DNA of 56,877 nt, filler included, from Dugesia japonica (Eukaryota): the NCBI GenBank assembly GCA_001938525.1. It is 5 parts of 5 records of this genome, joined end to end, with 100 filler letters (N's around TTAATTAATTAA, not from the genome) between each part and the next. Parts side by side here need not be neighbours in the genome. Positions count along the whole stretch, not along the records: positions 1 to 8,778 come from MQRL01644176.1; 4 more parts are not named here. One strand, given 5' to 3'. Each line of letters starts with the position of its first letter. Position 1 is the stretch's first letter. The position numbers and the translations under genes are program-made. Below, piece after piece: positions 1-8,778 of the stretch. The notes beneath the pieces are model-generated. The model worked only from the letters and a program-made list of their open reading frames with translations. It was not told where the DNA came from and made no database searches.

Positions 1-706
1 TATGGGCGGAAGAAAATCCACATGAGATACGTGAAGATAGTTTTCAATATCAGTTTTCATTGAACGTTTTGGTTAGAATTGTGGATAATTTTTAATCGGA
101 CCGGTGATCCTACCAGGAATACTTACCGCTGAGGTATACCGCAATTTTTTGGACAATATGCTACATGAGTTGCTTGAGGATATACCATGGGCAATGAGAA
201 AAGTAATGTGGTTTATGCATGATGGACCACCAGCGCATTTTAGTAGACTTACTCGTGGGTCACTAAAAGCAACATATCATGATCACTGGATTGGTAAAGG
301 TGGACCTCATGCATGGCCTGCTCGATCTCCGGACTTAAATCCGGTTTATTTTTTACGGGGCTATTTAAAATCTTTAGTTTATAACACGCTAGTGGAAAAT
401 GAAGATTCTATAAGGAACATTCCTGGTGTTTTCAAAAGAATGCGTGATTCAATGACGAGAAGATTAAATTCCTGCATATTAGCTGGCGGAGGTCATTTTC
501 AACAGTTCCTGTAAGTTAAAAAATGTAAATAAATAAGTTTAAGTAAATATTACGCTTATTGAACTTGTTTGTGTTTTTAAAATCTTTAAATGAGTGTATC
601 TTTGAAACGAGACGAGCTAGAAAAAGTGTTACTATATAATTATTCATAAAATAAGGCAAGGAATAATTCTTTAAATATTTGGCTCACGTTTAACTAACAC
701 CCTGTA
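1..706 (+). mobile_element. Tc1/mariner-superfamily (IS630-Tc1-mariner) transposon, 3' part: decayed DDE/D transposase C-terminus (ORF 104-514) and right TIR
   Basis: Motifs WFMHDGPPAH, WIGKGGPHAWPARSPDLNP and GGHFQQFL. The element ends ...ACACCCTG-TA at 701-706, the reverse complement of the TA-CAGGGTGT terminus. Confidence 0.85.
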
Positions 707-1153
707 TATAAAAATTAAAAAATCTCAGACATTGGAAATCCATGAATCGACCTCACATACCTAATAATGTACCTGGTTGTTTATTTTTATTTGCTTGTGT
801 GCATTTGTATTTTATGGTAAGTAAAGTCAAATTGCATGGATATATTACGTAAAACTGATTATACAATGCAGCACGTATTTTGTTCACATTAATCGTATTT
901 TGAACTCATCTATTGTTCGTTCCCCTGGTATAAAGGACAAGATAGACCATATTTTGAAACTTTTTAAATATATTTTGAAAATTTTTAAATATATTTCTGC
1001 AAAAACCTGTATTACTAATTTCCTTTCTTTATTATTAATAAAATTCATGAAAATAATGAAAAAGTGCGATATATTGATAAAATTTCAAAATTTAGTCATT
1101 ATCGAGTAATTATCAAGAACTTAATTATCATTTTTACATATTGATCACTAATA

Positions 1154-3814
1154 TTAACCATTGAATTCATTACTGAGTTCAATTAATAATTTATCGACTC
1201 TCCTTACATTCTCCGGATCAAACGGACGTTTCAAGACGATATCAATTATTCTTTTGCAACATTCATAGATGTTTTTAGTTTTCGAATTCATTGTTTTCAA
1301 ATTGTATTTTTTATCTAATTCTACCTTGTAATTTTTGTAACTTAAAATATTTTTCTCGAGAATATTTTCATATTTTCCGTACAAAATCATCAACACAATC
1401 CAAGCAAACGAGTAGATCATGCTCAATTTTTTTTCGCCTATTGAGATTATTTGATCATTGTGAGGATATTTAAAAAATATATCATTGCATAATTCACCAT
1501 TTTCTAAAGTAAATTTCCATTTATAAAATTCTTGTATGGTTTCAGATAATTTTATTTCAATATCAACTTTAGGCTTGAGAACACAGAATATCATATCTGA
1601 TCCGAAATTGTCCAATGGAATGTCAGCATCATTTAATTTATTAATTATTTCAAGCAATTTAGATAATAAATGAATTTGGTTGGTTTCGGTTATTTTTTGA
1701 AAAACCATTCTTAATGGTTGAAATTCGCCAAGTTTCGTTATAAAATAAAGCTCATTTTTATTCTCACAGTAAAACGTATAATGTTCCAATAAATCATTAC
1801 TAATAAATTGAGATCGTAAAAAGTACTGAATAATTACAAAATTTTTACTAGTAACTTTGTCAAATTGAAACTTTTCTCGTTTGATTATCATTTTATCATC
1901 GATAATTAAATTTTCATTTGATCCATTAAATTTTTTAATCAAATCAAAAATCTTAGATTTCTCTTTTATCAATTCGATAAAGTTATTATTTAATAACAGC
2001 CACATTTTAAAGTCTTCCATGATTTTTTTAATTTCCAGTTCGGTATCTTGTTTTGTTTTTTTATATGATAAAACGATTTCATTGGTTTTCTTTTCAATAG
2101 CATCAATCAAATATTTTCTTTCTATATCTAATTTAATTTTTAAATAATTTTCAACTTCCGGCAAAATATCTTCGATATCATACTTTAAATGTTCTTTTAA
2201 ATATTGTCTATAGTTTTCTATCGACTGTAATTCATTATAATTTTTTTCTAAAAAATGTTGTTTTAATTGATCATCAAAATATTTTTCAATTACTGAATTT
2301 AGATTATAAGTGTCATTTTCTTGTTTTAATGTGCAAAATGTATGAGGAAAATAGCGTTCTAATTCATTATTTTTTATTTCATTACAAAATGAATTAAATG
2401 AAATTCGATCTAAATTTTCTTGAATAATATTGGAAAACAAATTCGTATATCGATTAATTAAAAAATTTATTAATGATTTTGTGATTTTCCGTAATTTAAT
2501 ATTAATCAATATATCTTTGATTTGTTTTTCCTGGTTTTTGATAATCTCATCAATAGTACTTTTTAATTCGAATTTATTTTGATTTTGTGGGTTTAGTTTG
2601 ATTTTTTCATGAGTTTCATTGAATTTTAATAAAAGTTTTGCTTTACCAATATTTCCTATTTTTACGCCACGTAAATTGGTATCTCTCGTACAAATAATCT
2701 GTCCATAAACTGATTTAAAAACAGTATATAAATAAAATTTACAAAATTCGAATAAATCCCTAATTGTTTCTAAATTAATCAAATTGATTTGATTTGTGAT
2801 TTCAGTAAAGAAGTCGACATGTTTCCATAACAGAAACGGTAATTCGTTTTCTTTTTTCGTTCTCCAAGATTGTACTAACTTGCTGGAATATCCAAATAAA
2901 ACTATTATCTGTTCATGACATAATTTCTCCTTGATAGAATTGTAATGTATTTCATAATCTTTTGTGTAAAGGTCTAAATTATGTTTGTCTTTATTCAAAT
3001 CCATATTACTTTCATCATCTGTATCATCACCTGTATCATCATTGTCATCATCTGATTTATTCTCTTCAGAATCGTCTGAACTTTCGAATGTTCTCTCACG
3101 TGTAAATGCGTTATCGTATTTATTAAAAAGAAAAATTTTCTTTAATCTTTTTCTCGACTCAGCTATCAATGTTGTACAAAATGCTTCATCGGTGACCGTA
3201 AATTTCGGCCCAGCATCATAAATATAAACAATTAGCTGCGGATTAAATATTTTAACATTTATAAAAAATGTATCAGTAAGTTCTTTAGTTTCATTTAATC
3301 CAGGAGTATCAATAATATGAAAATTTTCATCATTAAATGTATATGGAGTTCCGATGTGATAAATAGTTCTCAGATCTATTTTCGAATCGGGCATTAAATC
3401 AGTTCTTCCCACGTATATTTCTTTAACGAATTTTCCATCAAATTCAAATTTTCTAATTATATTATTAGCTGTTTCAGAATACAAAGTAGGTTCTTTAGAA
3501 TAAAATATATGAGAAAAAAATGAAGTTGTCGGAGTACTTCGACTTGGTAAATTCACTTTTCCTGAAAGAAATTCCATGATACATCGGGATTTACCTGATT
3601 TCACTTGACCACAAAAAATTATTTTAATATTTCCTTCATTGAGATCGACAATATGACTTTTGCATTGATCTTTAGTATTTTTATCGATTTTATCATTAGA
3701 TTTAATTTTCATATAAAATCGATTAAACAATTCATAGTTTTCTTTGTAAATTTTGCATTGATTTCGAATATTAATTTTTGCTTCGTTTACTGCTGAATTG
3801 AAATTATTAGACAT
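1154..3814 (-). CDS. Dynamin-like GTPase + coiled coil + C-terminal kinase-like (probably pseudokinase) protein, DSTYK-like architecture
   Basis: Uninterrupted ORF of about 2.66 kb; first ATG at 3814 (MSNNF). GTPase motifs G1 GQVKSGKS, G2 LPSRSTPTT, G3 DTPG, G4 NKYD. An acidic insert follows. The C-terminus resembles kinase subdomains VIa/VIb (LLEIINKLNDADIPLDNFGSDMIF), IX (SMIYSFAWIVLMILYG) and XI, but lacks HRD and DFG. Confidence 0.8.
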   Translation of the reverse strand: MSNNFNSAVNEAKINIRNQCKIYKENYELFNRFYMKIKSNDKIDKNTKDQCKSHIVDLNEGNIKIIFCGQVKSGKSRCIMEFLSGKVNLPSRSTPTTSFFSHIFYSKEPTLYSETANNIIRKFEFDGKFVKEIYVGRTDLMPDSKIDLRTIYHIGTPYTFNDENFHIIDTPGLNETKELTDTFFINVKIFNPQLIVYIYDAGPKFTVTDEAFCTTLIAESRKRLKKIFLFNKYDNAFTRERTFESSDDSEENKSDDDNDDTGDDTDDESNMDLNKDKHNLDLYTKDYEIHYNSIKEKLCHEQIIVLFGYSSKLVQSWRTKKENELPFLLWKHVDFFTEITNQINLINLETIRDLFEFCKFYLYTVFKSVYGQIICTRDTNLRGVKIGNIGKAKLLLKFNETHEKIKLNPQNQNKFELKSTIDEIIKNQEKQIKDILINIKLRKITKSLINFLINRYTNLFSNIIQENLDRISFNSFCNEIKNNELERYFPHTFCTLKQENDTYNLNSVIEKYFDDQLKQHFLEKNYNELQSIENYRQYLKEHLKYDIEDILPEVENYLKIKLDIERKYLIDAIEKKTNEIVLSYKKTKQDTELEIKKIMEDFKMWLLLNNNFIELIKEKSKIFDLIKKFNGSNENLIIDDKMIIKREKFQFDKVTSKNFVIIQYFLRSQFISNDLLEHYTFYCENKNELYFITKLGEFQPLRMVFQKITETNQIHLLSKLLEIINKLNDADIPLDNFGSDMIFCVLKPKVDIEIKLSETIQEFYKWKFTLENGELCNDIFFKYPHNDQIISIGEKKLSMIYSFAWIVLMILYGKYENILEKNILSYKNYKVELDKKYNLKTMNSKTKNIYECCKRIIDIVLKRPFDPENVRRVDKLLIELSNEFNG

Positions 3815-5043
3815 GATTTGTATTAGCAATAAAACATAAATTTAATAATCATCCAAGGTTCAATATTGATTTTTAAAGGATGTCGATTTGATTCGTCAAT
3901 TATATATGCCATTAATGTGCTAATAAATGAAATCAATAACTAGTTATTATTAATTTCTATACACATTTTAGTAATTATTTAATTGACATTATTTTAATAA
4001 ATCTAAAGATAAAAATTATTAACTAAATTTTCATTTATAAAAAATTAAAAGTTTTTTATACTGAGTAATTTATAAAATGTAATAATTAATTAATAATTTA
4101 ATAATAATTAATTAATTGAAACCGTTTAATAAAAAATAATAACCGAATTTGCGATTGAAACAATGGCTTTTTTCTTTCAGATATAAAACTTGAAATTTAG
4201 AATTATATTGTAATAATGTTTAAAATTGTCTGGGTTCAATATGAATAAACATTATTAGTATATGACTTTAAATTGTTTCTTTAAATAAAAAATAAACAAC
4301 AGTTAATCAAGTTTAATTGGAATAAATTACAATGATATGCAGGAGCAATAGTGATTCACAACAAACCAATGATTATTATCTGAATCGGTAGGCAATGATT
4401 TGATGAAATCAACATTATAAATTAAATTAATATTTGCAAGTTTTATTATCTCTTTAATTTNNNNNNNNNNNNNNNNNNNNNNNNNNNNNNNNNNNNNNNN
4501 NNNNNNNNNNNNNNNNNNTCTAACATTTCGTAAATTTTTTTTCAAATTCATCCTAGTCTATATCCATTCTTATCCAAAATTTTATCCCATTTTTTTCTAT
4601 TCCAACTAGTTCATATAATATTTCTTCTGGTGTCCGAATTTTTCAATTATTTATTTTGGTTATTTATTCAAATCTCTAAATAATTTATTTTCTTCAATAT
4701 TTCCGATTTTTCAACAATATTTTGGTAAATATTTTGATTCTACCACCAAAGTATGCATTGTGTTCTAATTTTAACAGTCAATTTCAAATAAAACATTTGG
4801 ACTTTTGCAACTCCGTTATTATATTTTATTGAATTCATTTTCTTTTAATTATTAATTTATTTTTGATTTACTCACCGGCTTATGATTTTAATAATATAAT
4901 ATAATTTTATTTACATTTATAACCTATATCAGAAATGTCCAAGCATTTTGAACATAAAGCTAGTTTTGTCGATAGAAAATTTCAAAGAGTTGCAAATATC
5001 AAAATTTACAAAGTTAAAAGAAGTATTATTATAATTTTAAAAA

Positions 5044-5095
<52 letters not shown>
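5044..5095. repeat. Compound (TC)n(TA)n microsatellite
   Basis: Directly visible. Confidence 0.95.
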
Positions 5096-5098
<3 letters not shown>

Positions 5099-6371
5099 AC
5101 ACATTGAACCATCTCCCTCCTCCCTTCTGGTTGAGAAAATTTTTTGAAAATTGGTTCAGTATCCACCAATCACATTGCAGGAAAGTTTGCTTGCACACCA
5201 TGTATGTGTGTATAACTTTCCGTGTATGCATGTATAGTTTCAATCGAGCGATGAGACATTTATTGTCTTTCGCTGTTAGTGTGTCATAGTTGGTTAGTTA
5301 TTTAGCTAATTACAAATTATTTTCATTTTTGGCTGATGATTTTCGCAGATAACATAATATCCACTAATTAGAATGCAGCAGTTTTCGTAAATGACTATGT
5401 ATCCATCAATTTGAATGCAGTAACATGGGGAATTTAAATAATATTTATCCATACTTTAGAAAATAATGATAAAACATATAGAAAATCATTCTAACACCAA
5501 CAGGGTAGATTTAACATTAATATTCTCCTTGCAGACTTAAAATTAATGTTTAATATCCCCGGACGGATTTAATATTAATATATGATATTCTCCAGGAAAT
5601 GTTAATTTAATGATAACAATGTATTAACCAAATCAAATATCCATAAATCAGAATGCAAGTGATTATCTATTAACTAGCCAAAATGCATCTTTATTACAAG
5701 GTATGTGTGTATCAATATTACATCACAATTTCAAACCTGAACCAATTATTTAAGCAGAATAAAGATAGTGTACTAATTATAGGCATAGGAACACGGTGTC
5801 AAGAACTAAATGCAAATCCTGCGTTCAGTAAATGTGACTCACGATGAAATCAAGAAAAAAATACATAATACATATACATATATTACACAAATACGATACA
5901 AATGTCATAACATACGAACATACCAACACAATATTCGTATCGATCAAAGTAATATTTGAAACTGACCAATCAACCAATTAGTCAATATTCGAAAGTCAAA
6001 ATAAAATATATCTACAAATTAATTAATATAACAACATCTGTTAATTTTTTGGAATAATATGTGATTAACAATCTGAAATTTATGAACAAAATGTTTTAAT
6101 CAATTATTTTTATTTAAACAGCTGAATAATGAATGAGACTGAATAGTTCTATGTATGTATGCATTGAAAATTAGTATACATACTGATCTGTTTTGGTTAT
6201 ATTTTGAGACTTGTAATTTTACTAAGAACTCTAATATCTTTGAGCAGCATTTCTTTTTAAAACAAAATGAGCTAATAATATTAAGTACTGTGAAGTATGT
6301 TATTCATCAAAAATATTATTTAAAAAGGTATATAATCTTATTTCATATAAGGCAACTACATATATTACCAT

Positions 6372-6435
6372 CAGGGCCGGCCTTTGACACAGGCAAAGCA
6401 GGCAGCTGCCTGAAGCGCAAAATTAAGGCATCACT
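6372..6435 (+). mobile_element. Isolated hAT-like (Tip100-type) terminus
   Basis: CAGGGCCGGCCTTT...AGGCAAAGCAGGCAGCTGCC...GCGCAAAATT, a GC-rich start typical of hAT/MITE ends. No partner end was found. Confidence 0.4.
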
Positions 6436-6487
6436 TAAAAAAGTTCCATGTATTTAATCTTCTAACCGTTCTTCAAATACATGTAGT

Positions 6488-8778
6488 TAGGGAATCCAAT
6501 ACCTGACGAAAAATCAATACCGGCATTTCGGTAATAAAGAATTATAATTCCAGGATTCAGAATCATAAGAAATTAATTGAATCACTCTTTTTTCAAAGAT
6601 TATTCATATAAAAATAATTCATTAAAATAATAATTAAATTAAACATAAGGAACTTAAAAATCACAATTCATTAAAATATATTTCAATGAAAAATTTTGTT
6701 GGTCTATTTTGTAGAATACTTATTGAATAGTTATTTATCTCCTTTGAAATACCCTCTTAAAAAACAAAAAGCATCCAAAGTTATGTCATCCATTCTGCAT
6801 CGTAACTTATTTAAAATTAGAAATAGCCCTGTCGGATTCAACGCTGGTTGGGTGAACCGTTAAAAGAAGTTTGTAAACCTGTTGGAGATATTTTCCACGC
6901 ACACCTTCATTTTCAAACAGGCTCTTTTCATTTTAGGTATTTGGTGGGATCCCCTCCGTGTTCTGTTAGTTTTCTGACTTTACAACTTTTTTGTTTCAAA
7001 GTGGCTGCGTCTAACGGCTTCTTCAATAAAATTTCAGATTTTTTTGTTGTTTCATCAATCTCAACCTCACTGACCTCTGAATCTATAATTTCATCTGCCT
7101 GCTCTTCAGGAGCTGTGTTTTGATTCCAATGTCCCATTTGATTTTTGGTATTTCTTTTGGTGGCCACTTTTTAACTATCATATCCAAGAGCTTTATGCGG
7201 ATAACCAATTAGATCAGACAATTTCGTTCTTCTTCGAAGTATGCGTTCTTTCAACGCCGTAAGAAGTTCTTCGCTCAGTGATGACTTAATTCCACTTAGC
7301 CTATCAAATATAAATTTGATTGTAGTATCTGTAGAAAGTAAGTTGGCGTTATCGCGACATTGTGACTCAACAGCTAATTTTACCGGCAAAAGGGCTGAGA
7401 TTGTGACTGAAACTGTTTCAAAATCGGCATCAGTAAAATTTATACCTAGTTTTAAATCTATATCTGATTTTTGAATGCTTGATTTTAATTTGTGAAAACA
7501 TTTAAGCATTGCTAATAGACTATTCCAACTAGTCTTGGAATCTAAGATTAAGCAATATTCGTTGCCAAATTTGAGATTTACATAATTTTGAAGTCTCCTT
7601 TTTTGTTGGTGAACGTTTAAATATTTTCACAATTTTGATGTCTTTTTGTATAAGCGGACCAAGCTGATTATGAGTTATGTCCGTACCTCGTCCCTGTATT
7701 TCGTGATCCATTACTAATTCATCCTCATATGCATATACATCTCCTCCGACTGCATCATAATAATTGGATTCTTTAGTTTCGGAATCTGAATCAATATAAA
7801 TTACCTTCGGACTGATGTTTCTACCTTCACTTGCATCTTTTTTATAAAGAACATCTACGACCGCAAGTTGTATCGTATAAGCCAAATACAATTGCTGAGT
7901 AATGGGTACTAATTTGCCTACTTTTTGCATAACTGCAGCACTGTCATTTGTTAAACAAATGATATTATTCTCCCATGACAAACTATACTGATTCAATTTG
8001 TCATTTAAAACTGAAACACATTTTACTGCAGGTAAACTTCCATTGATACGGAGAAGTTCTAAATTCTAAAATTTTGATTCCGAATGAAGAATCTCATTTA
8101 TGTATTGAAGATTCCTTATAAAGATCCACTTATCGAAAGTAATACTAAACCCCTTTTCTTTTAATTTATAATCCTAGATTTCAGTAATTATTAATTGACG
8201 AATGGTTTTGCTATAATTAATGACGATTTTTTGTATGGTGATGGCTGATTTTGGAAGTTTATCACTTAAATTTAAGACTTTCAGTGATGTTCAAAGATCA
8301 TCGAATGTTATAAAAATTCTGAATGGGAGCCCATCGCGTGCTGTCAGTCTAGCTAGGATCGTTGCTAGTGAGTCGTCCTTGGTATTTCTAAAATATTTTG
8401 TAACTTTTGGAGAAGGCTTATCAGATTTTGAACTAGATCCAACTACAAGTTCAACAGCAACACGTTTTCGTGAAATTACTTCAAGTTTGGTCTTTAAATG
8501 AGTATGGAGGCCGCTTATCGAGCCACCTCCGGTTTTTATAATATTTGCGCACTTCTTGCATTTTGCGTAATCTCCTTTTTCTTTGAGAAATAAAAACCAG
8601 ATCGAATTTTCATCTCTGCCTATTGAATGATGAACAAACTTCCTACTCGGACTCTCTATGAACTAAATTAGATTGTTAAAAAAAATTAAAATTATATATG
8701 ACTTATAAAATTTTAATATTTAAATTTAATTTAAATAAACTTACCAAAGTTGTGCTAATTAAATATTTTCACAAAAAA
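6488..8778 (-). mobile_element. hAT DNA transposon with decayed BED-finger transposase (coding about 8665-6740)
   Basis: Minus-strand fragments: BED finger (SIWFLFLKEKGDYAKCKKC..LHTHLK), FSITFDKW, ICLTNDSAAVM, SWNSLLAML, PTSVES and TLDAFCFLRGYF. Stops and frameshifts are present. A GT..AG intron lies at about 8744-8665. The probable terminus TAGGGAATCC is near 6488. Confidence 0.85.

What the first reader, a model, noticed from the sequence alone, without database searches (positions are those of the whole stretch)
1154..3814. Intact intronless dynamin-like GTPase fused to an apparent pseudokinase (reverse of DSTYK activity pattern)
Seen: this is the only long unbroken ORF among decayed elements, so it is probably under selection. 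It has a complete G1-G4 set (GQVKSGKS, T, DTPG, NKYD), a D/E-rich insert after G4, a long helical stalk and a kinase-shaped C-terminus lacking a recognisable Gly loop, HRD and DFG. Known: animal DSTYK/Dusty pairs a diverged dynamin-like N-terminus with an active kinase, and dynamin-superfamily GTPases (Mx, GBP, bacterial DLPs) often act in membrane remodelling and immunity. Inference: this may belong to an uncharacterised, lineage-expanded GTPase-pseudokinase family, possibly innate-immune. Lacking introns in a genome with many tiny introns suggests retroposition or horizontal transfer.
Basis: partly seen in the sequence, partly recalled or inferred. Interest (0 to 1): 0.72.

Follow-up and report, generated by a model that had tools for sequence, protein, structure and literature searches.

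The report
Expressed dynamin-like GTPase fused to pseudokinase
This is a real, transcribed, intron-free single-copy animal gene whose protein joins an intact dynamin-type GTPase, through a long helical stalk, to a C-terminal domain that folds like a protein kinase but has lost the usual catalytic motifs; it is a rare, fast-evolving variant of the little-studied DSTYK-like "dynamin + kinase" layout, not an expanded immune family.

Summary
On the minus strand, 1157-3814 (stop 1154-1156) encodes 886 aa. A frame this long has a chance probability of about 10^-35 at this base composition.

- **GTPase:** residues 61-240 pass Pfam Dynamin_N (46.8 bits, cut-off 27). They align to bacterial dynamin-like G domains at 99.4% hhalign probability. 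G1-G4 are intact and invariant in the one full-length homologue.
- **C-terminus:** residues 620-886 fold (pLDDT 73, pTM 0.75) into a protein-kinase fold. At least 500 Foldseek hits are all kinases or pseudokinases, with Z 15 to IRAK4, JAK/TYK2 JH2 and BRAF. No sequence method detects a kinase. GxGxxG, HRD, DFG and APE are absent.
- **Expression:** stranded oligo-dT RNA-seq covers only about 1100-3824, on the gene's strand, with no splice joints.
- **Origin:** the gene is single-copy, has host-like GC3, and lies between high-copy host transposon remnants. It is therefore not a contaminant or recent transfer.
- **Family size:** an exhaustive search of 1.84 billion representatives found only two relatives (46% and 32% identity). 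"Lineage-expanded" is not supported.
- **Nearest architecture:** protein-language-model neighbours are Dynamin_N+Pkinase proteins of cnidarians and molluscs and DSTYK-like kinases.

An immune role, retroposition and true catalytic deadness remain untested. K645, D735, D740 and E758 are invariant, so atypical activity is possible.

The parts
1154..3814 (-). Complete intronless coding sequence, 886 aa plus stop (ATG 3812-3814, stop 1154-1156)
   Evidence: ORF list and translation. Full-length 45-46% identical homologue P0001 with the same start.
1000..3830 (-). Approximate transcription unit. The 5' end lies within about 10-20 nt of the ATG and the 3' end at about 1000-1100. No splice joints.
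   Evidence: Stranded oligo-dT RNA-seq (X23, X24) has depth 4-50 across 1116-3824 with the first mate on +. Depth is about 0 above 3825 and low below 1115. No joints are reported.
1028..1033 (-). Candidate AATAAA polyadenylation signal in the 3' UTR
   Evidence: Read in the sequence. Coverage falls in the 987-1115 bin. The exact cleavage site was not determined.
3635..3814 (-). N-terminal helical lead, residues 1-60
   Evidence: Helices 4-38 and 45-60 in the low-confidence model. Residues 41-60 are included in the hhalign match to the helix that precedes bacterial DLP G domains.
3095..3634 (-). Dynamin-type G domain, residues 61-240
   Evidence: Pfam Dynamin_N E 4.5e-12, 46.8 bits. hhalign to 12 bacterial DLPs: probability 99.4%, E 3e-21, residues 41-241. 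58% identity to P0001 makes it the best-conserved part.
3587..3610 (-). G1 / P-loop GQVKSGKS (residues 69-76)
   Evidence: G69, V71 and K72-S76 are invariant with P0001; position 70 is Q/E.
3524..3535 (-). G2 / switch I TPTT (residues 94-97)
   Evidence: Invariant. Aligns to the PTTA motif of bacterial DLPs.
3299..3310 (-). G3 / switch II DTPG (residues 169-172)
   Evidence: Invariant. Aligns to the DTPGLN motif of bacterial DLPs.
3113..3124 (-). G4 NKYD (residues 231-234)
   Evidence: Invariant.
2960..3094 (-). Acidic, probably disordered insert, residues 241-285 (18 D/E in 45)
   Evidence: Only 28% identical to P0001, but acidic in both.
1925..2959 (-). Helical middle region ('stalk'), residues 286-630, with no recognisable family
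   Evidence: Predicted almost wholly helical, but model pLDDT is 33.6. No Pfam, NCBIfam or PDB sequence match. No hhalign match to bacterial DLP stalks. 49% identity to P0001.
1157..1924 (-). Protein-kinase-fold domain lacking canonical motifs, residues 631-886
   Evidence: AF2 pLDDT 73.1, pTM 0.75. Foldseek gives at least 500 hits, all kinases or pseudokinases. VIA Z 15.1 with 217-237 residues aligned to IRAK4, TYK2/JAK JH2 and BRAF. ESM Atlas TM 0.62-0.66 to Pkinase clusters. No Pfam hit at E<=1.
1586..1618 (-). Catalytic-loop equivalent PLDNFGSDMIF (residues 733-743). D735, N736, G738 and D740 are invariant in all three homologues.
   Evidence: Alignment A1/A2. hhalign places it on the HRDLKxxN segment, with the register uncertain by one residue.
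1538..1549 (-). DFG equivalent LSET (residues 756-759). Invariant E758 stands in place of the DFG Asp.
   Evidence: hhalign column E <-> D of DFG. Invariance.
1880..1882 (-). Invariant K645 in the strand that precedes the modelled alpha-C helix; a possible beta3 Lys
   Evidence: Invariant column. Strand 642-648 and helix 656-674 in the model. The register is not verified, and a low-confidence hhalign alternative exists.

Best explanation
The locus is a functional, single-exon, single-copy host gene for a soluble 886-aa protein with five parts:
1. an N-terminal helical lead;
2. a catalytically competent-looking dynamin-superfamily G domain of the bacterial-DLP/mitofusin-like class;
3. an acidic disordered insert;
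4. a helical stalk of about 340 residues;
5. a C-terminal eukaryotic-protein-kinase fold, TKL-like by nearest structures, that has lost the Gly-rich loop, HRD, DFG and APE.

It is a highly diverged, lineage-restricted variant of the Dynamin_N-kinase (DSTYK-like) architecture.

Inferred mechanism, not shown here: GTP binding and G-domain dimerisation, as in other dynamin-like proteins, change the stalk conformation. That in turn controls the exposure or pairing of the kinase-like domain. The kinase-like domain acts mainly as a regulated docking or allosteric module, in the manner of JAK JH2, IRAK3 or MLKL, rather than as a conventional phosphotransferase. In short, it would be a GTPase-gated pseudokinase switch, functionally analogous to ROCO proteins.
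For: - **Real gene:** 886-codon ORF, chance about 10^-35. Strand-specific oligo-dT RNA-seq is confined to about 1100-3824 with no joints. It is held by 20 runs from 9 studies of the same organism.
- **Selection:** the full-length homologue is 45% identical, with dN 0.45 and pS saturated at 0.80. Between strains, 13 synonymous against 19 non-synonymous codon changes over 484 S and 2174 N sites give pN/pS of about 0.33, with no stops among the listed variants.
- **G domain:** Pfam Dynamin_N 46.8 bits. hhalign 99.4%, E 3e-21, to bacterial DLP G domains. G1-G4 are invariant apart from Q/E at position 70.
- **Kinase fold:**
- **Missing motifs and failed kinase HMMs:**
- **Solubility:** the maximum 19-residue Kyte-Doolittle mean is 1.41, so no transmembrane segment is predicted.
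- **Host origin:** GC3 is 0.211 against a host mean of 0.225. The flanks are host repeats with at least 163 and at least 152 copies.
- **Architecture relatives:** ESM-Atlas feature neighbours are Dynamin_N+Pkinase clusters (0.90, 211-212 of 256 features shared) and DSTYK-like clusters (0.85). DSTYK's kinase groups with IRAK and RAF (PMC9573974), the same group as the best structural matches here.
Against: - No sequence-level link to DSTYK-like proteins was found. Exhaustive phmmer returned only two family members plus G-domain-only, mostly bacterial-type DLPs.
- The language-model neighbours may reflect shared domain content rather than common descent.
- The N-terminal and stalk model failed (pLDDT 33.6). 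The stalk fold and any BDLP- or mitofusin-like bundle are therefore unverified.
- Dimerisation, GTP hydrolysis and lack of kinase activity are all inferred.
- K645, D735, D740 and E758 are invariant at or beside catalytic positions. This argues that the site may still bind nucleotide or metal.
Confidence: 0.6

Rival explanations
1. The C-terminal domain is an atypical but active enzyme, either a kinase or another nucleotide-dependent transferase. It would use invariant K645, D735, D740 and E758 in place of the VAIK Lys, HRD Asp, catalytic-loop Asn and DFG Asp. The protein would then be a GTPase-regulated active kinase, like DSTYK or LRRK2.
For: These four residues are invariant across three homologues that share only 30-45% identity. 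The D735-to-D740 spacing (+5) equals the canonical Asp-to-Asn spacing. E758 aligns with the DFG Asp. From background knowledge, several proteins once called pseudokinases turned out to be catalytic (WNK, SelO, FAM20 family).
Against: There is no Gly-rich loop and only two strands before the alpha-C-like helix in the model. That helix has no invariant Glu; its invariant residues are N658, I662 and Y664-F665-L666-R667. hhalign's own register puts N736, not D735, on the HRD Asp, and a non-conserved M/I on the catalytic Asn. No APE motif is present. Kinase HMMs fail completely.
Confidence: 0.25
2. It is simply this lineage's single, extremely diverged DSTYK orthologue rather than a separate paralogous family.
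For: The domain order and total length are similar (886 aa against about 970-1020). DSTYK-like clusters are among the nearest feature neighbours. It is single-copy. The best structural matches are in the TKL group, where DSTYK belongs (PMC9573974).
Against: phmmer and word-based searches do not reach any DSTYK-like protein. The genome holds another intron-containing family of dynamin-type exons with the same GQVKSGKS and IIDTPGLNE motifs, only 20-22% identical to this gene (L002, L048, L049). That family is an alternative candidate for the canonical gene. Canonical DSTYK kinases keep their catalytic motifs (PMC9573974), and this protein does not.
Confidence: 0.25
3. It is a recent retrocopy or horizontally acquired gene (bacterial DLP plus captured kinase) that is drifting, not a selected host gene.
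For: The gene is intronless. Outside the family, the best G-domain hits are bacterial-type DLPs, for example P0003 (E 1.8e-8), which lies in an operon with an M48 peptidase and a second DLP. The third homologue, P0002, may start at a splice acceptor, which hints that relatives have introns.
Against: The frame is intact in two strains and conserved over its full length with a 45% identical homologue. GC3 is host-like. No poly(A) remnant was seen in the 3' flank, and the repeat search found no flanking direct or inverted repeats bracketing the gene. The gene is embedded between host repeats. It is transcribed from a discrete unit. Many host kinase domains and ORFs of 770-1195 aa are also uninterrupted. 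No bacterial protein matches the stalk or the kinase-like part.
Confidence: 0.05

Closest known systems
DSTYK / Dusty and the uncharacterised Dynamin_N+Pkinase proteins of cnidarians and molluscs (ESM-Atlas clusters)
   Same: N-terminal dynamin-type region, long middle region and C-terminal TKL-like kinase fold, with a similar length. They are the nearest protein-language-model neighbours (0.90 and 0.85).
   Different: No sequence similarity is detectable by phmmer. Here the G domain keeps all of G1-G4, while the kinase domain has lost GxGxxG, HRD, DFG and APE and fails Pfam. DSTYK keeps most catalytic residues (PMC9573974). I found no paper in the searchable library that describes DSTYK's N-terminus as dynamin-like.
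Bacterial dynamin-like proteins (BDLP, DynA, LeoA class) and mitofusin-type DLPs
   Same: G-domain homology at 99.4% hhalign probability, including the preceding helix, the PTT switch I, DTPGLN and NKxD. A helical region follows the G domain.
   Different: No match beyond residue 241. No PADLOC or NCBIfam hit. No transmembrane or paddle-like hydrophobic segment. It carries a kinase-fold domain that these proteins lack.
ROCO proteins (LRRK2 and relatives: Roc GTPase-COR-kinase)
   Same: One polypeptide that couples a dimerising GTPase to a kinase-fold output domain. This is a resemblance in how it may work.
   Different: The GTPase class is different: dynamin-type, not Ras-like Roc. Pfam Roc scores only 19.1 bits against a cut-off of 27, over the P-loop alone. 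There is no COR domain, and the kinase domain is degenerate.
Stand-alone or tandem pseudokinase domains (JAK/TYK2 JH2, IRAK3, HER3)
   Same: They are among the best structural matches (Z 14.6-15.1). They share loss of canonical catalytic motifs with retention of the fold.
   Different: Those domains still pass kinase HMMs and mostly bind ATP. This domain is invisible to kinase HMMs and appears to lack the first beta-hairpin and Gly-rich loop.

Membership tests
Dynamin superfamily (Pfam Dynamin_N; BDLP/mitofusin-like class) | Score above the curated Pfam Dynamin_N threshold | tested here: met
   46.8 bits against a cut-off of 27, residues 65-231 covering model positions 1-166 of 168. The own-genome scan gives 51.1 bits.
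Dynamin superfamily (Pfam Dynamin_N; BDLP/mitofusin-like class) | Intact G1 (GxxxxGKS), G2 Thr, G3 (DxxG) and G4 (N/TKxD) motifs | tested here: met
   GQVKSGKS, TPTT, DTPG and NKYD are at the expected spacing. They are invariant in P0001 apart from Q/E at position 70.
Dynamin superfamily (Pfam Dynamin_N; BDLP/mitofusin-like class) | Profile-level homology to established DLP G domains | tested here: met
   hhalign probability 99.4%, E 3e-21, residues 41-241 against 12 bacterial-type DLPs.
Dynamin superfamily (Pfam Dynamin_N; BDLP/mitofusin-like class) | Helical bundle or stalk following the G domain, homologous to DLP stalks | tested here: inconclusive
   Predicted helical, but the AF2 model has pLDDT 33.6. 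hhalign finds no match beyond residue 241.
Dynamin superfamily (Pfam Dynamin_N; BDLP/mitofusin-like class) | Nucleotide-dependent G-domain dimerisation and stimulated GTP hydrolysis | not testable with these tools
   Needs biochemistry. No complex prediction was attempted because the monomer model already failed.
Eukaryotic protein kinase fold / pseudokinase | Bilobal ePK fold including the alpha-F to alpha-I helices | tested here: met
   Model pLDDT 73.1, pTM 0.75. At least 500 Foldseek hits are all kinases. Z 15.1 with 217-237 of 267 residues aligned. ESM Atlas TM 0.62-0.66.
Eukaryotic protein kinase fold / pseudokinase | Match to Pkinase or PK_Tyr_Ser-Thr HMMs | tested here: not met
   No Pfam family at E<=1 for residues 572-886. 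No PDB profile hit at E<=10. hhalign against 18 host kinases gives only 9.3% probability, though the alignment is colinear.
Eukaryotic protein kinase fold / pseudokinase | Canonical catalytic motifs (GxGxxG, VAIK Lys with alpha-C Glu, HRD, DFG, APE) | tested here: not met
   All are absent as motifs. Possible surrogates K645, D735, D740 and E758 are invariant, but their register is uncertain.
Eukaryotic protein kinase fold / pseudokinase | Absence of phosphotransfer activity (the definition of a pseudokinase) | not testable with these tools
   Requires ATP-binding and kinase assays.
DSTYK / Dusty family | Dynamin-like N-terminus, middle region and C-terminal kinase-fold domain in that order | tested here: met
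   Domain order. Neighbouring Atlas clusters carry PF00350+PF00069 or are named DSTYK-like.
DSTYK / Dusty family | Detectable sequence homology to DSTYK-family proteins | tested here: not met
   Exhaustive phmmer over 1.84 billion representatives returned no protein combining a G domain with a kinase domain. A direct profile comparison with DSTYK sequences could not be made, because no tool gave me DSTYK sequences.
DSTYK / Dusty family | Catalytically competent TKL kinase domain | tested here: not met
   Motifs are lost. DSTYK retains 9 of 12 critical residues (PMC9573974).
ROCO (Roc-COR-kinase) | Ras-like Roc GTPase followed by a COR domain | tested here: not met
   Roc scores 19.1 bits, below the cut-off of 27, and covers the P-loop only. 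There is no COR hit.

The most novel reading that the evidence does not exclude
The protein is an independently assembled, lineage-specific signalling switch. A bacterial-DLP-class GTPase would gate a radically remodelled kinase fold that either scaffolds partners or carries out non-canonical catalysis through a K645 / D735 / D740 / E758 site without any Gly-rich loop. That would make it a dynamin-based counterpart of ROCO proteins, and a new, sequence-invisible branch of the kinase fold.
Probability: 0.2. Interest if true: 0.7.

Novelty: new variant of a known kind. Interest (0 to 1): 0.5.

Why it matters
Fusions of a dynamin-type GTPase to a kinase (DSTYK-like) are present in animal databases but are essentially uncharacterised. 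I found no paper in the searchable library that treats DSTYK's N-terminus as a GTPase. This gene is a natural variant with the opposite pattern: the GTPase looks fully competent and the kinase fold is stripped of its catalytic motifs. It could therefore show what the GTPase module does on its own, and how it talks to the kinase-fold module.

It is also an example of a kinase fold that no sequence HMM detects and only structure prediction reveals. The family is tiny (three known members) and evolves fast, so its biological reach may be narrow.

Tried and rejected
- **N-terminal and stalk fold:** AF2 on residues 1-625 with a two-sequence alignment gave pLDDT 33.6 and was unusable.
- **More family members:** three word-indexed searches (full length, C-terminal profile, G-domain region) found only P0001 and P0002. 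This agrees with the exhaustive search.
- **Sequence comparison with solved structures:** only a weak Der GTPase hit for the G domain, and nothing for the C-terminus at E<=10.
- **NCBIfam and PADLOC:** no hits.
- **DSTYK sequences for a direct test:** no tool gave me any, so orthology stays open.
- **Literature:** searches on DSTYK with dynamin, dynamin-like or GTPase, on dynamin-pseudokinase fusions, and on the three SRA run accessions of the homologues found nothing on point, apart from DSTYK's TKL/IRAK-like placement.
- **Downstream kinase exons for the paralogous dynamin-type exons L002, L048 and L049:** none visible, because the contigs are short and full of gaps.
- **Overlap of contigs between the PF00350 and PF07714 hit lists:** I compared the two lists by eye and saw none.
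- **Transposon carriage or retrocopy hallmarks:** the repeat search found no terminal inverted repeats or flanking direct repeats around the gene, and I saw no poly(A) remnant in the 3' flank. The upstream 630 bp match elsewhere in the genome only weakly (68-83% identity over 64-224 bases), which I read as AT-rich low-complexity sequence.
- **Contaminant:** rejected.
- **Chance ORF or decaying pseudogene:** rejected.
- **Complex prediction of a G-domain dimer:** not sent. The monomer could not be modelled and the result would not have changed my odds.
- **N-lobe register:** hhalign in low-threshold and global modes suggested an alternative N-lobe alignment at near-zero confidence. I do not rely on it.
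Full report
**1. The observation**

The piece (1-8778) is AT-rich: 17-39% GC in 500-base windows. It has one assembly gap at 4461-4518. Only one long ORF exists. It lies on the minus strand from the first ATG at 3814 to the stop at 1154-1156 and encodes 886 aa. With this composition a stop is expected about every 11 codons, so the chance of 886 open codons is about 10^-35.5.

- G1 GQVKSGKS (residues 69-76)
- G2 TPTT (94-97)
- G3 DTPG (169-172)
- G4 NKYD (231-234)
- an acidic stretch at residues 241-285, with 18 D/E in 45 residues

**2. It is a working gene of the host**

The sequence is held by 20 runs from 9 studies labelled with one organism (coded). I laid raw reads of two stranded oligo-dT RNA-seq libraries on 600-4460.
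- Depth is 4-50 across 1116-3824.
- Almost all first mates lie on the + strand, which for the usual stranded chemistry means the RNA comes from the minus strand.
- Depth is essentially zero above 3825 and low below 1115.
- No joints were reported.

The mRNA is therefore a discrete, unspliced unit of about 2.75 kb. Its 5' UTR is very short. An AATAAA lies at 1028-1033.

Those reads come from a strain about 1-5% different from the assembly. Among the best-supported differences, 13 codons change synonymously and 19 non-synonymously, over 484 synonymous and 2174 non-synonymous sites. That gives pN/pS of about 0.33, and none of the listed changes creates a stop. This is a partial sample, because 59 further differences were not listed.

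Both flanks are high-copy host repeats:
- A Tc1/mariner-like DDE fragment at 104-514 has at least 163 mostly decayed copies.
- The ORFs at 7171-7996 have at least 152 copies.

The ORF's GC3 (0.211) sits inside the range of 21 other host ORFs (mean 0.225, range 0.14-0.34). Contamination and recent horizontal transfer are therefore rejected.

**3. Family size**

The gene is single-copy in the 854-Mb, 648,594-contig assembly. The only other hit is a weak G-domain exon (E 2.7e-4).

An exhaustive phmmer scan of 1.84 billion representatives found two relatives:
- P0001 is 888 aa, 45-46% identical over the full length (45% by BLASTP; 46% by phmmer), and has the same start.
- P0002 is 371 aa and 32% identical to residues 512-881.

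Both come from Logan assemblies of other runs, with clearly different base composition (GC 0.37 and 0.34 against 0.25), so they belong to other species. Three further word-indexed searches added nothing.

Against P0001, dN is 0.45 while synonymous sites are saturated (pS 0.80). Conservation is graded:

| Region | Identity to P0001 |
|---|---|
| G domain | 58% |
| Stalk | 49% |
| Kinase-like domain | 37% |
| Acidic insert | 28% |

This is purifying selection over the whole length on a fast-evolving protein.

**4. The N-terminal half**

Pfam Dynamin_N passes its gathering threshold (46.8 bits against 27).

All other significant phmmer hits match only the G domain. Every one I scanned carries Dynamin_N, and two of them also carry the bacterial dynamin-like helical domain. 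The best of them, P0003, sits in a bacterial-style operon with an M48 peptidase and a second DLP, and it matches PADLOC LeoA.

A profile of the window protein plus P0001 aligns to a profile of 12 such proteins at 99.4% probability (E 3e-21) over residues 41-241. PTT, DTPGLN and NKxD are in register. Nothing aligns beyond residue 241.

The G1-G4 residues are invariant between the two full-length homologues, apart from Q/E at position 70 in the P-loop. The G domain therefore looks competent.

The AF2 model of residues 1-625 failed (pLDDT 33.6). It predicts helices almost throughout 286-624, but the stalk fold is not established. No transmembrane-like segment exists.

**5. The C-terminal domain**

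Sequence methods see nothing here:
- Pfam finds no family at E<=1.
- A PDB profile search finds nothing at E<=10.
- The genome-wide PF07714 scan does not list this contig among its 150 listed matches; 8 more were not shown.

AF2 on residues 620-886 with the three-sequence alignment gave pLDDT 73.1 and pTM 0.75.
- Foldseek against the PDB returned at least 500 hits, and every listed hit is a protein kinase or pseudokinase, at probability 1.00.
- The VIA re-alignment gives Z 14.4-15.1 over 217-237 residues for IRAK4, IRAK1, IRAK3, TYK2/JAK1/JAK2 JH2, BRAF and RIPK4.
- The ESM Atlas shape search gives TM 0.62-0.66 to Pkinase clusters.

So the fold is a eukaryotic protein kinase fold, closest to the TKL group, although those Z values are tied.

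A profile-profile alignment to 18 canonical kinase domains taken from this same genome is weak (probability 9.3%, E 0.0035). It is nevertheless colinear through the whole C-lobe.
- LYFIT falls on beta5.
- (L/I)DNFG(S/P)D(M/I)IF falls on HRDLKxxNIL.
- IKLxE(T/S) falls on KIxDFG.
- SMxYSxxW falls on the DxWSxGV helix F.

GxGxxG, HRD, DFG and APE are all gone. The modelled alpha-C-like helix has no invariant Glu.

By sequence criteria this is a pseudokinase. However, K645, D735, N736, G738, D740 and E758 are invariant in all three homologues.
- The D735-D740 spacing equals the canonical Asp-Asn spacing.
- E758 aligns with the DFG Asp.
- The alignment register is uncertain by one residue: hhalign puts N736 on the HRD Asp.

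I therefore keep an atypical-activity rival at 0.25.

**6. Relation to DSTYK**

A protein-language-model search of the whole protein returned these nearest clusters:
- Two families of about 1000-aa proteins carrying Pkinase (100% of members) and Dynamin_N (98%), from Cnidaria and Mollusca (score 0.90, 211-212 of 256 features shared).
- Clusters named 'dual serine/threonine and tyrosine protein kinase-like' (score 0.85).

This shows that the architecture exists elsewhere and that the model independently 'sees' both domains. It is a lead, not proof of descent.

DSTYK's kinase groups with IRAK and RAF kinases (PMC9573974), the same neighbourhood as the best structural matches here. No paper in the library describes DSTYK's N-terminus as dynamin-like.

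No tool gave me DSTYK sequences, so orthology could not be tested directly. phmmer does not reach such proteins.

The genome holds another family of intron-containing dynamin-type exons (L002, L048, L049). They share GQVKSGKS and IIDTPGLNE with this gene but are only 20-22% identical to it. They could be the canonical gene(s), but their contigs are too short to show downstream exons.

**7. Intronlessness**

The RNA data confirm it, but it is not unusual here. Dozens of PF07714 matches span the whole kinase model within one stop-free frame. ORFs of 769-1195 aa are uninterrupted.

I saw no poly(A) remnant in the 3' flank, and the repeat search found no flanking direct repeats or terminal inverted repeats around the gene. 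The upstream 630 bp match elsewhere in the genome only weakly, which I read as AT-rich low-complexity sequence.

P0002's ORF is preceded by an in-frame stop four codons upstream and by a possible AG acceptor. That relative may therefore have an intron near residue 508. This is a hint, no more.

**8. Mechanism**

What is shown:
- a competent-looking dynamin-type G domain;
- a helical middle region;
- a kinase fold without the canonical motifs;
- a soluble protein that is expressed and conserved.

What is inferred from what dynamin-like proteins and pseudokinases generally do: nucleotide-dependent G-domain dimerisation drives stalk rearrangement. That rearrangement controls the pairing or accessibility of the kinase-like domain, which acts as a docking or allosteric module. 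This would be a GTPase-gated pseudokinase, working like a ROCO protein but built from different parts.

An immune role is pure speculation at this stage.

**9. Verdict**

This is a new, sequence-divergent variant of a known but uncharacterised architecture. It is of moderate interest.

Noticed in passing
window 104-514 (+): A 136-aa ORF with weak DDE_3 (Tc1/mariner-type) similarity. At least 163 mostly stop-ridden copies occur across the genome at 52-82% identity, so it is a decayed interspersed transposon family.
   Followed up: partly
window 7171-7996 (-): Two adjacent ORFs (112 and 155 aa) have no Pfam hit, but the second has at least 152 copies in the genome. A few copies lie in ORFs of up to about 500 aa. 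By eye it resembles the middle of a hAT transposase (my reading, not tested).
   Followed up: partly
G000 contigs C560296 (L002:931-1725), C601012 (L048:288-1016), C558046 (L049:2218-3027): Three loci in G000 carry closely similar, intron-bounded dynamin-type exons. They share GQVKSGKS and IIDTPGLNE with the window gene but are only 20-22% identical to it. Downstream exons are not visible on these short, gap-filled contigs. They may belong to the canonical Dynamin_N+kinase gene(s).
   Followed up: partly
G000, many contigs (e.g. C545246 = L051:305-823, C473728, C308417, C643824, C589998): The genome gives at least 121 Dynamin_N matches. They include a multi-copy set of short ORFs (about 165-180 aa) covering model positions 7-145, often with stops and, in the one copy I read (L051), a degenerate P-loop. 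This is an unexplained, partly decayed dynamin-like family.
   Followed up: partly
G000, e.g. L042:1766-5350, L043:502-3252, L044:955-3543: At least 158 PK_Tyr_Ser-Thr matches, dozens of which span the whole kinase domain in one stop-free frame, and uninterrupted ORFs of 769-1195 aa. Intron-poor kinase genes are common in this genome.
   Followed up: partly
L004:120-140 / L005:33-53: The ORF of the third homologue (P0002) has an in-frame TAA four codons upstream and a possible AG acceptor just before the conserved sequence. It has no ATG. It is probably the last exon of an intron-containing relative, or a truncated copy. The two runs hold it at 100% identity.
   Followed up: partly
window 1566-1574 (codons 747-750): Four consecutive codons differ non-synonymously between the assembly and the RNA-seq strain (KPKV to NSSD). 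They lie in the loop between the two strands that follow the catalytic-loop equivalent, which is also the most variable spot among the homologues.
   Followed up: no
G000, e.g. C463910/C463911, C458572/C458573, C462498-C462500: Neighbouring contig numbers give identical hits. The assembly therefore contains duplicate (haplotype or redundant) contigs, and copy counts from it are upper-biased. The window gene nevertheless appears only once.
   Followed up: no
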